Below are positions 43,901 to 50,581 of a stretch of DNA of 64,000 bases, piece after piece (the first letter of the stretch is position 1; every line of letters starts with the position of its first letter). Origin of the DNA: Auanema rhodensis. Lineage: Eukaryota; Animalia; Nematoda. The notes below the pieces were generated by a model, which searched no databases, was not told the DNA's origin, and was given only the letters and a program-made list of their open reading frames with translations. Made by a program: the position numbers and the translations under genes. The stretch is from contig OZ059895.1 in the NCBI GenBank assembly GCA_964057225.1, positions 13,702,001 through 13,766,000 of the forward strand, read 5' to 3'.

Positions 43901-46865
43901 GCTTTATCTCATTTGAGTACTATGGTAAAACGAGAATTAGCTACAGTTGTAGGATTTGAACACCATACTCATGCTGGTATGATTATTTTGTTCCTGAATA
44001 TTCTCAAAACAACATTTTAGGGACTGTATTGTTCCATCAAGGAGAGCCAGGTAAACATTGGTATATAATACTGAAAGGAAGTGTAGATGTAGTAATTCAT
44101 GGAAAAGTTATAATAAAATTTGTTTATCATATTTATAAAATAATATTAGGGTGTTGTATGCACATTGCAAGAAGGTGATGATTTTGGCAAACTAGCTTTG
44201 GTAAACGATGCTCCTAGAGCAGCTACTGTAGCTTTGCGAGAAGATGATTCACAATTTCTAGTTGTTAATAAATATGACTTTAACAGGTAAGAAAATAGCT
44301 AAGAAAGATAAATTTACTCATGTCCTTGTTTAGAATAATTCGCGATGTTGAAGCTAATACGGTGCGATTGAAAGAACATGGGCAGGATGTACTAGTTTTG
44401 GAGAAAATGAGCTGGCCCAGAGGTGCCGCTGTAGATGATGGAATGCCTGCTTTAACTGTCAAGGGCCAATGCAGGTATATTGCAATTTCTTAATTATATT
44501 TATTTATTGATATTTAATAGTTATTCGGTTATGGCTGGTTTACCTGAAAAGATGATTGAATATGTTTTAGAAACGAGAGTAGATGCTCAAACTGAAGAGG
44601 TACTTCATTCATTTTTTCAAGTATAGGCTAATTGATCAGATTTTTTTAGGGAGACATGGATGTGTTTCTGGAAGATTTCATTTTAACACATATTATATAT
44701 ATGCCAACCAATGTATTATGTAATTATCTTCGAAACTATTACAATCGGAAGCCTGATGTAAGTTTATTTCTTATTCCTTCTCCACTTTTGTGCTAATTTT
44801 CCAGTTTCACACTGATCCATTGCGTGCTCCAAATTGTGTATCACTTGCCATCGATTATGAAGCTGATATGGAGTTTAGCATTGCATCCAAACGTCGTGTT
44901 GTTACCTTTGTTAATCTTTGGGTTAGCACTTTAGGCGTTCAATTTTTTCTTCATCCTGCAGCTAATTCATTTATTGAAGTTTATAAAACGTAAATTTTGC
45001 ATTTACTGATAATTTGTTGTTAGGAATTATATTGTTATGTCTTGGACGACAATAAAAGATTTCCTCGAATGCAGCCATTACTCAATCGTATGACAATCTT
45101 ACAAGAAACTAGAGAAGAAGCTATGAGGTTAGTATGATTTCCTAACGAGTAAAACTCTATTTCTAGAAACCTTGCAAGACACTCGGCCGTAGTCCTGGAA
45201 TGCGGAGTTTTAGCAACTTCAGCTCCCGCCCCTTTGCCAATTCTTCCCAGTGATACTTGTATGTAAAATTATAGTTTAAACAAGTAGTATTATTCTGTAG
45301 GCAATCAGATAATTCATCTGGCTGATACAACATCCATCGTCCTTAATATTAGAATGGATAAAACTGCTCAAGATGTGTGCGAACTAGCTCGGGCTCGTGT
45401 ACGCTATAAGCATAGTAATGAAGCTCTTTCCTTGGTCGAAGTCCGAAGTGGAGGAGGTAGCCATAAACAGTTTTTTTTTATTTTCAAATTTTTCTATTAG
45501 AACGACATGTTTTTTCGCCACGTGATATTTCAATATCAACTATGCTCTCGCTCAATGGTAAACTTTATATTGCTTATAAAGATGAAATAATGTCATTGGT
45601 GAGTGTAGTAAACTAGAATTCAGCGTTTCAAAATTATTATAAATAAACCTTTTAGGTAGCGCAACCTGATCAGAATGGGCCTATAGAATCAATTCACTCA
45701 TCTGTTTTAGATTTCGTAAGAAGTTCTGAATTAGCACAGCAACTTTTTATTCTTCACACTCAATTATTTCATGCATGTGACGATATTGAACTTATCAATC
45801 AGGTAAAATTAATATTATGGAAATAAGTTAAATTTAAATCTTATTAGGTGATAGGTCGGGAGCAATTTCCAGGGAGAGTTCCTTCAAATTTGGATTTAAT
45901 GATGAGAAGGTTCAACGAAGTTCAATATTGGTCTACAACTGAAATTCTCCTAGCAGTCCCTGCTAAACGTGTGAATACGTTGAGAAAATTCATCAAGATT
46001 GCTATGCAGTAACAATATTTTTTCTTCTTCTACATAAAAGAAAAATTTAAGTGCTAAAGACAACGGAGATTTGTTATCGTTTTTTGCAATTACTCTTGGT
46101 CTTAGTAACATATCTGTAAGCAGACTTTCACAAACTTGGCAGGTATGTAAATGCTTGAAAGTGTTTTTTTGTTTTTATTGTGATATATTTTATTCCCTGA
46201 GCTATTGCTGCAGAAGCAGCGTGGCGCAGTGGAAGCGTGCTGGGCCCATAACCCAGAGGTCGGTGGATCGAAACCACTCGCTGCTAATGTTTTTGCAAAT
46301 ATTTTAAAAAATACTCAAGAGCTAAGGAATTCTGTTTTAGAGACTCCCGATGAAAATGAGAAGGCAGTTTGCAGATTTCGAATCTTTATTAGATCCGTCT
46401 AGGAATCATAGACCTTATCGTGCTCTTATTGCTAAAGTCTGTTAAAATTTGTTTTGTATAATAGTATAAGTTTAATTGATAGATGAATCCACCATATATT
46501 CCTTTTGTTCCTCTTCTACTGAAGGATTTAACTTTTATTCACGATGGAAACAAAACATATTATAATGGTTTGGTTAATTTTGAAAAGATGGTTAGTCTAC
46601 ATAACAATCCGAGTTCATAGAACATGTATTTTAGCACATGGTGGCAAACACTCTTCGAAGTTTTCGTCATTGCAAACTACGATTTTCAAGTAAGATTTTC
46701 CAGAACTCTCATAAAGATAATTGTGTTTCATTTTCAGATCAATGCTATGAAATGAAAAAAGTTTGTGAAACTCAAAATCTACTACGCAACTTTCGAGTTA
46801 TCGATAACCAGAAGCGTCTAATGGAGTTATCATATTTAATAGAACCGAAACGTAGAAAGAACTAA
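40962..46865 (+). CDS. epac-1: EPAC/RAPGEF4 cAMP-activated Rap GEF (cNMP-DEP-cNMP-REM-RA-RasGEF)
   Basis: [10 protein letters not shown]... first cNMP domain ([22 protein letters not shown]); DEP ([14 protein letters not shown]...GIWQTLLE); [12 protein letters not shown]; second cNMP domain ([18 protein letters not shown]); REM; RasGEF ([52 protein letters not shown]). The ORF is open upstream of the ATG to an acceptor at ~40936, so a further 5' exon is possible. Confidence 0.93.
46215..46286 (+). tRNA. tRNA-iMet: Initiator tRNA-Met (CAT), inside an epac-1 intron
   Basis: AGCAGCGTGGCGCAGTGGAAGCGTGCTGGGCCCATAACCCAGAGGTCGGTGGATCGAAACCACTCGCTGCTA: A1:U72 pair, three G-C pairs in the anticodon stem, AUCG T-loop typical of initiator tRNAs. 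A TTTTT Pol III terminator follows 3 nt downstream. Confidence 0.98.
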
Positions 46866-47312
46866 TAGCAATCATATATCAATGTACATGCCACTGTTTC
46901 CGCTCAATATTTGTATACTTCTCAAACCTATACTAATTGACTATAGCTCAATTATTCTGCAATTATATATAGGAGCGTGTCTAACTTTAAAATATTTCGA
47001 TTGGTTAAATCTCTTTAAAGATATCTGTACGCACTTGTAAATTGCTCAAGTATGTACTGTTATATATTTTATTATATATATTATGAATTTTACTTATTTA
47101 TGCTTAACTTCATTTTGCTATATAATTTCACTATCGTCAACATTGTCTAAATACCGGTGCTTTCAAGGTTGATTTATTAATCACATTCACTGTTTCAACA
47201 GTAAAGTAATGATTATAATAAATATAATATATTAAACAATGCAAATATATTTGATATTTAATTATATATGCTACAGTATAGCAACAAAATTTAAATATTT
47301 AAAGGTCTAAAA

Positions 47313-47673
47313 TTATTGGTCTCGGCACGATTTCACCGTATGGCTTTATCGACAACTCGCGTGAATTCCTAACTTCAGCGTCGCGGCTTGCGGAGCGCTG
47401 CGTGCGACATGCGTACCTTCTGAATACGTGCGTCGCGGTCGTACCGGACCGCGAGGCTTCGCGAAGCGGCCTGCGTGGCGTACATATCCTAAACAGCGCG
47501 AATATTCAGTTTTTGAATGCGGCTGGTATTCAAATCAACGGTTTCAAGCACCGTTGGTGCACTTTCGTATTAACAAATAAGGCTTCCAACAACTTGGTTC
47601 TTTGTGGGCCAACTCCCGGAAGCAAAAAATGCGATAAAGTGTCTGTAGGATAAGTACGTTACGAGCCCAATAA
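47313..47673 (+). ncRNA. Putative structured non-coding RNA or structured GC-rich element, family unknown
   Basis: Closing stem 47313-24/47662-73, at least 6 internal hairpins and two crossing long-range helices. G-U pairs favour the + strand. See findings. Confidence 0.45.
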
Positions 47674-47736
47674 GTTTATTTCTCGTTTTATGTTTTCATA
47701 GTAGCTTTCATCATATAATTGTTGTATTTAAGGTAA

Positions 47737-50581
47737 ATGGATGTAAGAGACGATGTCCGCAGTCGCGAAGCAAATTACAACAGTTCTGTAAAAGTAGCTC
47801 GCGAAAATACTGCTGAAGACGGGACGGGGACAGACTATCAGCTAACAGAGCTGAAGACAATGGTGAAAAATGAAGGTAGGTTAAATAATTTGTTGGATTT
47901 TGTTAAGGGCGAAAATTTAAAAAAGGTTTAATCAATTAAATGCTATCCTACGTTGGCTTTATTTATCGCTCTCTGGAAATTTCAGATTGCATAAGAATAT
48001 AGATGATTCTAAAAATATTGTTGTCCCCGAAAATAACGCAAAATAAAATTAAAATTATATAGATCTTAATCTTTTAATATTATAATATGATTATAATTTA
48101 AATTATGAAAGATTATAATATGAGTTTTTTTTTTGGTTTTTTAAGTTATCTAATTTTTTCCTAATCTTTGTTCTGTTCCCTATTAAATTTTGATGGAAAG
48201 ATTCGAATATCTTATATTCATAAAAAAGTCCATAAAAAACATTTTTGCAAGAGCAGTACTGAATTTTGAGAAAATCATCGCAATGGGTGCGCAGTCGTTG
48301 TGGTGAGTGTTTAGGGGCGGGGTTTTATTCCGATGTGCGCATTGAGGTTAGCAAGTTCGTCCTGCGCAATAGCAACTTTACATAAGTGTTCATGATATTT
48401 CGTTTTCAAGATTCCATGCCCACGATTGAATCTCCCTTGGAAGAATTAACGGAGGATGATAGAGGAGCTCAAGAAAGAACATCAGTAGTGGCTGATGAAG
48501 TGGGACATTGAATGATTATTCGAGAAATATTCTTGGTTTTATTTAGACTTTCCATCTTCAATTTGTTGATGTTGTTAGTCGGCACCCCTGTTTATATAAT
48601 CCTGACGATGAGTTTCATGGCAGTAAACATCAAAGTGCTGAATTTAGAAGTCAGGTCTGGAAGAAGATTGCCAAAGATGTGCACTGGACAGGTTTCATAA
48701 TTTAAAAAGGGATAAAAATTGACCATATCTTAGATGATTTGCAAGGCCTTCAATTGCTATGGAAACGTCTGCGAGATAAATTTGTTAGAAAATTAAGACG
48801 TAATGGGGGATTAATAAATGAGGTATTAAATCTTGCATTATACTATATTTTTTATCATCTAGGATCGTCACGATAGTGACCAATTATTTGAAAGGATGAG
48901 ATGGTTAATACCATATATATCTACTCACTGTAAGTTTTAAGTGAATATATATATGTAAAAAACTTTTCGTGTTATAAATTCAGCTCCTCCAACAAGTCAA
49001 GCACAATCTAGAGATTTTTATGTAGAACCGCATGGAATGGGGCATGATGTTATGATAAGTGGGTATGTTTAATAGTTTTAATGTATATACTGTATTTATT
49101 CCGATTCTTAGTTATCAATCCCAATCAAATCCCGCAAATAATCGTATGTCGAACACAGGAGGGTCTGTTGAAGCTATTCGAACAACAAGTGGTTCAAGTA
49201 AGGCTGGTTTTTTAGTAGCAAAAAAAGTTCAATTATTTCAGCTTCTGGCTATTATTTGGTAAGAAACCCTAGTGGGACTGGCGGACAGGCATTTCGCGTA
49301 GTAAATTCGGGAAGTGAGATATCAAGCGGGTTTGTGTATCTTTCTCCTACGAATTACCTTTTTTTCCCACAGAATCTCTTCTAGTAGGGTTACTGTGTTG
49401 CCTGCCACAAGGTCAACTAATGGTAATGCTACTGTTTTACATCTACAGCCGGCGACCTCTAGCCAAGTTTCACGGAATTCACCTCGTATTCACATTGTTA
49501 GTTGCTCTCGTTATCAGTTTTATTAAAAAATATCTTTTAGATTCAGCCTGGCGCATCGAACTATGAGAGAGCAAGTCCTAATGATAATTCCACATCAGAA
49601 GGCTCTAACGTTAATATTAAAAAAGGTTTTTATTACCTATGATTTTGATTTGATAATATTGTTCTTTCAGAAAGCTCCTCTACTATGTCTATGGTTCTTG
49701 ACCCCAATCCTCATTTTTATAATGGAAATCAAAAAGTATACCGCCTTCATGTTAATGAAAATGAAAAAATAAATGAATGGAAACCTGAAATACAAAGGTA
49801 AATGCCTCAGATGTATTTGTTCTTAATGAATTTTCAGTATGCAAGGCTTACCCAGGAAGCGTATGATCCTGTCTAGAGGACAAGGCAATCCAGCTCAGGT
49901 AATATTTTTTTTATTGAAAGTAGTATAGTTTATTTTCAAGATGGGAGAAGAAGTGATTATTGATGATGGGATTCAGGAACGCACTGTTGTTATTGATCAG
50001 GATGGTATTTTATGAAAATAATGTACTATAGAAATATTTCTTATTTTAGATCCAGATTCTCCTCTTTTAAGCGAATCCCCCCTAGCTTCGATGATGATTA
50101 GTGGTCATCAGGTAATTTTTTTTTTCTAATAATTTAATATTTTTGTATTTAGGTTGTCAATAGTCGCCACCAAAACATGTCTCAAAGAGTAATGCCTTCT
50201 TCTCATCTCATGCAACATCACCAAATGAGCGAGGTATTTTTTCAAATTTTAAATCCATATATATCGTCATTAAGCCTGGTTTATCGTCTTCACCAACTTC
50301 TCATCCTGGCTATCTTCAACAAAGTCAGTACGATGCCGATTTAGCTTTCCAACAATTAATAAGTTCAAGTCTAGCTCGTTATGATGATGATATGGTATCT
50401 TAATTTTTATTTTGCTATATACGATTATAAATTTTAGAAAGCACTTATGAAATTTAACATTCAAAGAATTCTTTTGGAAGCTAGGTATGGTGCTGGGACG
50501 TGTCAACGTATAATTCAAGAAGAGGAATTGACTGAGACTGCAGGTAGTAGTGCGGTTGCTCATGAAATGGTCACAAAATAG
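47737..50581 (+). CDS. MADF-domain (Myb/SANT-like) transcription factor with C-terminal BESS-like motif
   Basis: FHLQFVDVVSRHPCLYNPDD...FRSQVWKKIAKDV...LQLLWKRLRDKFVRKLRR...FERMRWL is the MADF pattern. C-terminal DADLAFQQLISSSLARYDDDMKALMKFNIQRILLEARYG is BESS-like. Confidence 0.85.
48280..48410 (+). promoter_or_regulatory. Putative internal (alternative) promoter in intron 1 of the MADF gene
   Basis: GC box GGGGCGGGG at 48314-48322, three TGCGCA palindromes (48288, 48336, 48363), then a TTTTCAAG acceptor (48410) and an in-frame ATG at 48416. Confidence 0.5.

What the first reader, a model, noticed from the sequence alone, without database searches (positions are those of the whole stretch)
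47313..47673. Unassigned ~360-nt pseudoknotted structured element (candidate novel ncRNA) between epac-1 and the MADF gene
Seen in sequence: a sharply bounded GC-rich island in very AT-rich flanks that is almost entirely self-complementary. (1) Closing stem ttattggtctcg 47313-24 / cgagcccaataa 47662-73 (11 of 12 bp). (2) Long-range helix A gctttatcg 47343-51 / cgataaagt 47632-40. (3) Long-range helix B gcgtacatatccta 47478-91 / taggataagtacgt 47646-59 (13 of 14 bp, extendable by cag/ctg). A and B cross each other, so they form a pseudoknot or a conformational switch. (4) Local hairpins: cagcgt/gcgctg 47376-400; tgcgacatgcgta/tacgtgcgtcgcg 47403-37, competing with tcgcggtc/gaccgcga 47433-54; tttgaatgc/gtattcaaa 47512-34; caacggt/accgttg 47536-56; gcttcc/ggaagc 47582-623 enclosing ttggttc/gggccaa. 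Non-Watson-Crick pairs are mostly G-U on the + strand, which points to RNA-level rather than DNA-level structure. I do not see the signature motifs of RNase P/MRP, SRP, U3, spliceosomal snRNAs, group I introns or hammerhead ribozymes. Inference: a stand-alone structured RNA, or a structured leader/outron of the MADF gene whose acceptor lies ~60 nt downstream.
Basis: partly seen in the sequence, partly recalled or inferred. Interest (0 to 1): 0.8.

Follow-up and report, generated by a model that had tools for sequence, protein, structure and literature searches.

The report
Conserved promoter and leader of MADF gene
The GC-rich island is real and folds better than chance, but it is most likely the promoter and transcribed 5' leader of the neighbouring MADF gene, starting with a known nematode germline-promoter motif, and not a new stand-alone RNA gene.

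Summary
Window 47313-47673 is the only strongly CpG-rich island in the 64 kb.

The proposed RNA architecture does not survive comparison. In the syntenic locus of Auanema sp. JU1783 only 47315-47534 is conserved (84%). The closing stem, helix A and the 3' hairpins are lost or weakened. Only helix B persists.

The 5' arm of the "closing stem" is a near-perfect copy (12/13) of the published C. elegans germline-promoter motif m2. An m1 core and an m3 match lie just upstream. An m2-like pattern occurs 45 times in this genome against 1 for a reversed control.

Core blocks recur upstream of the MADF orthologue in strongylids. There they lie inside spliced mRNA contigs that run on into the MADF coding sequence.

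Best reading: a CpG-dense, m1m2-type promoter plus the 5' leader or outron of the MADF-BESS gene. A functional fold in the leader is not excluded, because folding is sense-strand-biased in five orthologues and the consensus fold scores z -2.8. A stand-alone ncRNA and a young MITE are unlikely.

Earlier scan notes reached similar verdicts on other GC islands of this genome.

The parts
47271..47278 (-). Exact match to germline-promoter motif m3 (TACTGTAR), in reverse orientation
   Evidence: scan. Motif consensus from PMC9757741, supplementary file 3. An 8-mer alone is weak evidence.
47298..47312 (-). m1-like motif. Only the core TTTAAAGG matches (10/15 of GTRTGCGCCTTTAAA), in divergent orientation to m2.
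   Evidence: The pair TTAAAGG-N4-30-m2 occurs 6 times in the genome against 0 for the reversed control.
47318..47330 (+). m2 promoter motif GGTCTCGGCACGA (12/13 of GGTCTCGMCACGA).
   Evidence: The pattern GGTCYCGNCRCGA gives 45 genome hits against 1 for the control. It is kept at the aligned place in Auanema and in L004. Other copies lie upstream of the start codons of ORFs that I read, by eye only, as rps-6-like and rab-6-like. No Rfam snRNA lies next to 20 other copies.
47313..47673 (+).
   Evidence: Single copy in the 181-Mb genome.
47376..47388 (+). Conserved block TTCAGCGTCGCGG, holding the first copy of GCGWCGCGG (47378-86)
   Evidence: Present in strongylid loci L003 and L004; Auanema L002 has G at the W position. 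The two-copy spacing of 50-53 nt is kept in the window, L003 and L004.
47418..47438 (+). Conserved block TTCTGAA-N5-GCGTCGCGG, holding the second copy (47430-38)
   Evidence: The 5-nt spacing between TTCTGAA and the 9-mer is the same in the window, L002, L003 and L004.
47433..47454 (+). Perfect 8-bp hairpin h3. It lies in a ~19-nt segment present only in this genome and Auanema.
   Evidence: a gap in both strongylid rows.
47463..47524 (+). Most conserved block, holding CAGCGCGAA at 47494-502. The stretch 47478-47522 is identical in Auanema. It is homologous to the 5' ends of mRNA contigs L008 and, more weakly, L029.
47478..47491 (+). Helix B, 5' arm
   Evidence: 13/14 pairs in both this genome and Auanema, with mismatches at different positions.
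47646..47659 (+). Helix B, 3' arm. It is a small conserved block inside otherwise unalignable sequence.
47657..47678 (-). 3' arm of the terminal inverted repeat. By eye it reads as a degenerate inverted m2 (about 9/13). It is not conserved in Auanema.
   Evidence: The m2 comparison is from direct reading of the sequence.
47725..47731 (+). Candidate 3' splice or trans-splice acceptor (TTTAAG) 5 nt before the ATG. Auanema and Cylicocyclus have TTTTCAG / TTCAG at the same place.
   Evidence: Inference only; there are no read data.
47737..47875 (+). Coding exon 1 of the MADF-BESS gene (ATG at 47737). It contains the conserved YQLTELK stretch.
   Evidence: P0031 has EYQLTELK. One search shows that the ATGGATGTA start is kept in Auanema.
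48547..48691 (+). MADF-domain exon, used as the anchor to find orthologues
   Evidence: Pfam MADF_DNA_bdg, 24.2 bits against a cutoff of 22. 79% identical to P0002 of Auanema sp. JU1783.

Best explanation
The island is the CpG-dense promoter and the transcribed 5' leader (5'UTR or outron) of the downstream MADF-BESS gene, conserved across rhabditine nematodes.

Its 5' edge carries an m3 / m1-core / m2 motif group of the kind that, in C. elegans, marks promoters bound by the THAP protein HIM-17. Downstream lie locus-specific conserved blocks: two GCGWCGCGG copies about 52 nt apart, TTCTGAA, and CAGCGCGAA.

Transcription probably starts inside the island, roughly at 47380-47470, and runs into exon 1 at 47737. 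This start position is inferred. The upstream half would therefore act as DNA, and the downstream half would be leader RNA.

Shown:
- motif matches and their genome-wide enrichment
- synteny
- sequence conservation
- presence of the core in orthologous mRNA leaders

Inferred:
- the start site in this species
- binding by a HIM-17 orthologue
- trans-splicing at 47731
For: Position and synteny:
- The island lies between the epac-like last exon (stop at 46865) and the MADF ATG at 47737, on the same strand.
- The same gene order, Epac-MADF-DDRGK-KH-ATR, holds in Auanema sp. JU1783.

Conservation:
- Window 47315-47534 is 84% identical to L002 4628-4847, while the flanks do not align.
- The core blocks, with their spacing, are kept in the Cylicocyclus genome and in the strongylid-like contig L004.
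- C. bovis has a CpG-dense island at the same position.

Transcript evidence from other species:
- Spliced mRNA contigs L004, L005 and L008, and more weakly L029, carry the homologous blocks in one molecule with the MADF coding sequence.

Promoter motifs:
- The m2 match is 12/13; an m1 core and an m3 match lie upstream.
- The m2-like pattern is enriched 45 to 1, and the m1-m2 pair 6 to 0.
- Two other copies lie 330-380 nt upstream of ORF starts that I read, by eye, as rps-6-like and rab-6-like.
- CpG-dense promoters are established in C. elegans (PMC4079969).
- m1m2 promoters bound by HIM-17 are established in C. elegans (PMC9757741).

This species:
- Four small runs of one study hold 28-48% of the sampled words of 47250-47750. 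This fits partial transcription of the stretch.
Against:
- The runs are only guessed to be RNA.
- m1 matches only in its core. The m1-m2 gap here is 5 nt, outside the 10-30 bp used in the paper.
- GCGWCGCGG is not enriched genome-wide (113 hits against 404 for the control), so it is not a general promoter word.
- Excess folding stability, stronger on the sense strand, recurs in five orthologues. The four-species consensus fold gives z -2.8 on the + strand and -0.4 to -0.8 on the - strand. A purely DNA-level reading does not predict this.
- L004 and L005 contain the whole core including m2, so part of the "promoter" is transcribed there on one strand or the other.
Confidence: 0.75

Rival explanations
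1. The transcribed part of the island is a cis-acting structured RNA domain in the MADF mRNA leader or outron. It would control translation, trans-splicing or autoregulation. Helix B (47478-91 / 47646-59) would close a variable ~150-nt domain, and small conserved hairpins would lie in the core. This is compatible with the promoter reading and adds an RNA-level function to it.
For: Sense against antisense z-scores:
- window: -3.5 to -4.0 against -2.4
- Auanema: -2.3 to -2.6 against -0.95
- Cylicocyclus: -3.7 against -3.3
- L004: -2.8 to -3.1 against -1.9
- C. bovis, 3' window: -3.1 against -0.6

Other points:
- Four control islands of the same genome gave -1.5 to +3.5.
- The four-species consensus fold gives z -2.8 on the + strand only.
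- A 7-bp hairpin at 47378-84 / 47395-401 has G-C in Auanema and A-U in both strongylids at one pair.
- Helix B has 13/14 pairs in both close species although the interior has diverged.
- The putative leader alone (47464-47745) gives z -3.7.
- The leaders are retained in mature mRNA contigs of three other species.
Against: - The leader-only fold is weak in Auanema (z -1.7) and absent in L008 (z -0.85).
- Most helices are not conserved.
- The strong long-range helix of strongylids (the TTCTGAA block pairing with TCAGAAACCG) sits at a different position from helix B.
- Only two independent clades are available. The core alignment is ambiguous because of internal repeats (A2 differs from A3).
- GC-rich repeated GCG words pair easily by chance.
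- Inverted copies of DNA motifs such as m2 give the same signal.
- If the mRNA is trans-spliced at 47731, the structure would be discarded with the outron.
Confidence: 0.2
2. A stand-alone structured non-coding RNA gene of about 360 nt, with a closing stem and a pseudoknot, transcribed independently of the MADF gene.
For: - A sharply bounded GC island in AT-rich DNA, with a TATA-like TTTAAATATTT about 25 nt upstream.
- The ends are complementary.
- z is -3.5 to -4.0.
- A tRNA-Met gene lies 1 kb upstream.
Against: - No Rfam match.
- A T5 run inside the + strand and an A6 run inside block Pol III on either strand.
- The closing stem is not conserved, and its 5' arm is the m2 promoter motif.
- The m2 pattern is not an snRNA promoter element: 20 other copies have no Rfam RNA beside them.
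- Homologous sequence in other species is continuous with the MADF coding sequence in mRNA contigs.
- It is single copy.
Confidence: 0.04
3. A relic of a miniature inverted-repeat transposon whose inverted repeats carried m1/m2 motifs, like CERP2 in Caenorhabditis, later co-opted as the MADF promoter.
For: - The terminal inverted repeat of 22 nt at 82% lies exactly at the island's edges.
- Its left arm is m2. Its right arm reads as a degenerate inverted m2 (by eye).
- In C. elegans the m1m2 promoters derive from the inverted repeats of CERP2 and CELE2 MITEs (PMC9757741).
Against: - It is single copy in 181 Mb, and only three loose matches to the 20-nt terminus exist.
- There is no target-site duplication.
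- The right arm is absent in Auanema.
- The interior and m2 are shared with strongylids at the syntenic site, so any insertion would be very old.
- The paper reports that CERP2 is not abundant outside Caenorhabditis.
Confidence: 0.08

Closest known systems
m1m2 (HIM-17-bound) germline promoters of Caenorhabditis elegans (Carelli et al. 2022, PMC9757741)
   Same: - An m2 match of 12/13 lies at the 5' edge, with an m1 core on the opposite strand just upstream (divergent orientation) and an m3 match nearby.
- It sits a few hundred nt upstream of a protein-coding start.
- The motifs lie in an inverted-repeat context.
   Different: - m1 matches only in its TTTAAAGG core.
- The m1-m2 gap is 5 nt, not 10-30 bp.
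- The genome is not a Caenorhabditis and holds only about 45 m2-like sites rather than thousands. There is no repeat family.
- HIM-17 binding and germline expression are untested.
- A long CpG-dense conserved block follows the motifs.
CpG-dense (CFP-1-targeted, HOT) promoters of C. elegans (Chen et al. 2014, PMC4079969)
   Same: - A ~300-nt CpG-dense island (o/e 1.6-1.8) at the 5' end of a gene, in a genome without CpG depletion.
- An island is kept at the same position in the C. bovis orthologue.
   Different: - Chromatin state, CFP-1 binding and breadth of expression are unknown here.
- This island also carries unusually well conserved, locus-specific sequence blocks.
- It shows a sense-biased folding signal.
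Structured 5' leaders (cis-regulatory RNA elements in 5'UTRs)
   Same: - The leader is long (at least 115-615 nt in the orthologous mRNA contigs), GC-rich, and folds better than shuffles.
- One long-range helix is kept between two species.
   Different: - No Rfam family matches.
- The structure is not demonstrably conserved beyond two close species.
- The leader may be removed by trans-splicing in this species.

Membership tests
m1m2 / HIM-17 germline promoters (C. elegans) | m2 motif GGTCTCGMCACGA present | tested here: met
   Window 47318-47330 matches 12/13. Consensus from supplementary file 3 of PMC9757741.
m1m2 / HIM-17 germline promoters (C. elegans) | m1 motif GTRTGCGCCTTTAAA present | tested here: inconclusive
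   Only 10/15 positions match, and these include the TTTAAAGG core. The core paired with m2 recurs 6 times against 0 for the control in this genome.
m1m2 / HIM-17 germline promoters (C. elegans) | m1 and m2 separated by 10-30 bp, mostly in divergent orientation | tested here: inconclusive
   The orientation is divergent. The gap between the 15-mer and the 13-mer is 5 nt here, and longer (about 12-22 nt) at three other loci I measured by eye.
m1m2 / HIM-17 germline promoters (C. elegans) | Bound by HIM-17 and active in the germ line | not testable with these tools
   Needs ChIP and expression data for this species.
CpG-dense promoters (CFP-1 targets) | High CpG density at the 5' end of a gene | tested here: met
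   37 CpG in 361 nt, o/e 1.63, against 0.85 for the whole window. The island ends 64 nt before the MADF ATG.
CpG-dense promoters (CFP-1 targets) | Start site inside the island, nucleosome depletion, H3K4me3 and CFP-1 | not testable with these tools
   The only indirect hint is that mRNA contigs L008 and L029 begin inside the homologous block.
Known structured RNA families (RNase P/MRP, SRP, 7SK, U3, snRNAs, telomerase RNA; Rfam 15) | Covariance-model match | tested here: not met
   No relevant hit at E <= 10 on either strand. By eye I saw no TTAGGC-template-like run.
MITE | Many dispersed copies with terminal inverted repeats and target-site duplications | tested here: not met
   Single copy, three loose matches to the terminus, and no duplication at the edges.
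Stand-alone ncRNA gene | Own transcript with defined ends, separate from neighbouring mRNAs | not tested
In other species the homologous sequence is joined to the MADF coding sequence.

The most novel reading that the evidence does not exclude
The sense-strand leader of the MADF-BESS mRNA carries a functional RNA fold kept across rhabditine nematodes: helix B closing a variable domain, plus small core hairpins. The fold could, for example, let the MADF protein or another factor control its own translation or trans-splicing. A second, DNA-level novelty is also possible: the m2 / m1-m2 promoter code would predate the Caenorhabditis CERP2 transposon expansion and would be an ancestral host promoter signal shared with strongylids.
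Probability: 0.18. Interest if true: 0.55.

Novelty: new member of a known kind. Interest (0 to 1): 0.3.

Why it matters
This removes a candidate "novel ncRNA" and replaces it with a concrete, testable promoter-plus-leader model. It also gives a likely explanation for some of the other "structured GC islands" flagged in this genome.

Two by-products are of modest interest. First, the m2 motif described for Caenorhabditis germline promoters is strongly enriched in a non-Caenorhabditis rhabditid. At this locus an m2-like match is also seen in a strongylid-like mRNA contig, which bears on whether transposons created or merely spread that promoter code. Second, five orthologous leaders show a sense-biased folding excess that deserves a proper covariation test.

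Tried and rejected
RNA families:
- Rfam scans at E <= 10 on 2 kb and on 431 nt found nothing.

Protein look-ups:
- Exact look-ups of the island's 83-aa ORF and of the exon-1 ORF are not on record.
- Word searches with the exon-1 ORF and with the island ORF were blank.
- The island ORF has no Pfam family. Indels of 3, 4 and 19 nt against strongylids argue against coding.
- P0003, P0032 and P0034 are not on record.

Relatives:
- Diploscapter (L006) shows no homologue of the island and no m2.

Motif ideas rejected:
- m2 as an snRNA-type proximal element: no Rfam RNA lies beside 20 copies.
- GCGWCGCGG as a general promoter word: it is not enriched, and many copies sit in a transposon-like pair about 1.4 kb apart.

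Background islands:
- Much of the fetched 13.30-13.51 Mb stretch was a ~528-nt tandem array, so only four usable control islands were obtained.

Full report
**What is there.** Window 47313-47673 is a sharply bounded island in AT-rich DNA. GC is 0.56 in 47300-47499, against 0.22-0.26 in the flanks. It is the only stretch of the 64-kb window that combines GC >= 0.5 with CpG excess (o/e 1.63-1.81, 37 CpG, against 0.85 for the window). The repeat finder independently reports the terminal inverted repeat 47308-29 / 47657-78 and the long-range pair 47474-91 / 47646-63. The + strand folds at -130 kcal/mol, with z -3.5 to -4.0, or -3.0 to -3.4 when shuffles keep local composition. The - strand gives z -1.9 to -2.4.

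**Context.** An epac-like gene ends at 46865 on the + strand, with a tRNA-Met in one of its introns. The island follows. At 47737 an ATG opens exon 1 of a MADF gene. Its MADF-domain exon (48547-48691) passes the Pfam cutoff. DDRGK, KH and ATR-like genes follow.

**Not a known RNA, not a repeat.** Rfam gives no match even at E <= 10. The island is single copy in the 181-Mb genome. A T5 run at 47510-14 and an A6 run at 47624-29 would stop Pol III on either strand.

**Relatives.** The MADF exon found P0002 of Auanema sp. JU1783, and the locus there has the same gene order. In that locus, window 47315-47534 aligns at 84% identity while the flanks do not align. Positions 47478-47522 are identical.

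Helix by helix, this genome against Auanema:

| Helix | Pairs here | Pairs in Auanema |
|---|---|---|
| closing stem | 11/12 | 5/12 |
| helix A | 9/9 | 7/9 (poorly aligned stretch) |
| helix B | 13/14 | 13/14 |
| h4 | 9/9 | 6/9 |
| h5 | 7/7 | 3/7 |
| h6, h7 | 6/6, 7/7 | lost |

Only the 5' 220 nt and the helix-B 3' arm are.

**Deeper relatives.** The orthologue search gave strongylid, Diploscapter, Pristionchus and C. bovis proteins. In the Cylicocyclus genome (L003) and in spliced mRNA contigs of other species (L004/L005, L008, L029), the same blocks recur upstream of the conserved exon-1 motif YQLTELK:
- TTCAGCG-W-CGCGG
- about 39 nt further on, TTCTGAA-N5-GCG-W-CGCGG
- then GAGCGG...GGCGT...CAGCGCGAA

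In L004 and L005 the whole core is in one molecule with the MADF coding sequence. L008 and L029 begin 20-30 nt before the CAGCGCGAA block, which hints at a start site inside the island. L004 also begins with a T24 run, which is the poly(A) tail of an antisense transcript. C. bovis has a CpG-dense island at the same place. Diploscapter shows nothing comparable.

**The 5' edge is a promoter module.** The 5' arm of the "closing stem" recurs elsewhere in the genome. The pattern GGTCYCGNCRCGA occurs 45 times, against 1 for the reversed control. Two copies lie 330-380 nt upstream of ORF starts that I read, by eye only, as rps-6-like and rab-6-like. No Rfam RNA lies beside 20 other copies, so the pattern is not an snRNA promoter element.

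The pattern is the m2 motif of C. elegans germline promoters. Supplementary file 3 of PMC9757741 gives m1 as GTRTGCGCCTTTAAA, m2 as GGTCTCGMCACGA and m3 as TACTGTAR. At this locus:
- 47318-30 matches m2 at 12/13.
- An m1 core (TTTAAAGG) lies at 47298-305 on the opposite strand.
- An exact m3 match lies at 47271-78.

The m1-core/m2 pair recurs 6 times against 0 for the control. Auanema has an m2-like match (11/13) at the aligned position, and L004 has a looser one (10/13) near its 5' edge. In C. elegans such pairs are bound by HIM-17 and are needed for promoter activity. They derive from MITE inverted repeats. CpG-dense promoters are likewise established there.

**What still speaks for RNA structure.**

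| Locus | z, sense | z, antisense |
|---|---|---|
| window | -3.5 to -4.0 | -2.4 |
| Auanema | -2.3 to -2.6 | -0.95 |
| Cylicocyclus | -3.7 | -3.3 |
| L004 | -2.8 to -3.1 | -1.9 |
| C. bovis, 3' window | -3.1 | -0.6 |

- Four other CpG-rich islands of this genome gave z between -1.5 and +3.5.
- Column-shuffled controls of the four-species core give a consensus-fold z of -2.8 on the + strand and -0.4 to -0.8 on the - strand.
- One 7-bp hairpin has a G-C to A-U exchange at one pair.

Against this:
- The leader-only folds are weak in Auanema (z -1.7) and absent in L008 (z -0.85).
- The strong long-range helix of strongylids is at a different position.
- The core alignment is ambiguous.
- Only two independent clades are available.

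**Verdict.** The island is best read as an m1m2-type, CpG-dense promoter plus the 5' leader or outron of the MADF-BESS gene (0.75). A functional leader fold is an open add-on (about 0.2). A stand-alone ncRNA (0.04) and a MITE relic (0.08) are unlikely. Four small runs hold 28-48% of the sampled words of 47250-47750, which fits partial transcription but proves nothing.

Noticed in passing
own genome, 45 sites (e.g. L030, L031, L038, L041, L050): The C. elegans germline-promoter motif m2 is about 45-fold enriched over a reversed control in this non-Caenorhabditis rhabditid. It pairs with a TTAAAGG (m1 core) 6 times against 0 for the control, at single-copy promoters. The source paper reports that the CERP2 carrier transposon is not abundant outside Caenorhabditis, so the motif may predate that expansion.
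   Followed up: partly
window 46215-46286 (+): A tRNA-Met (CAT) gene lies inside an intron of the epac-like gene. This stretch tripped the human-like filter of read laying and was not sent to any search tool afterwards.
   Followed up: no
G000:C3 about 13.32-13.51 Mb (L010-L019): A long tandem array with a period of about 528 nt, whose units each carry a ~215-nt CpG-rich segment (o/e about 1.4). It lies about 0.2-0.4 Mb upstream of the window.
   Followed up: no
own genome, e.g. G000:C3:4526553 / 4527968 and C6:9844033 / 9845448: GCGTCGCGG occurs at many loci as inverted pairs exactly 1,415 nt apart. This suggests a ~1.4-kb transposon family with that word in its terminal inverted repeats.
   Followed up: no
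L004:1-60: The strongylid-like mRNA contig starts with T24, the poly(A) tail of an antisense transcript that ends upstream of the MADF promoter island. The island may be bidirectional there.
   Followed up: no
L002:5055 and L003:5186: The annotated MADF proteins of Auanema sp. JU1783 (P0002) and Cylicocyclus nassatus (P0030) appear to miss the conserved first coding exon (ATGGA..., YQLTELK). The exon is present in the DNA and in mRNA contigs of other species.
   Followed up: partly
window 48280-48370: A second, smaller GC-rich patch lies inside intron 1 of the MADF gene. Not examined.
   Followed up: no
L006 (Diploscapter pachys): No homologue of the island and no m2 lie upstream of the MADF orthologue. 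The gene model there is fused to a Patched-like neighbour. The source paper notes that Diploscapter lacks HIM-17.
   Followed up: no
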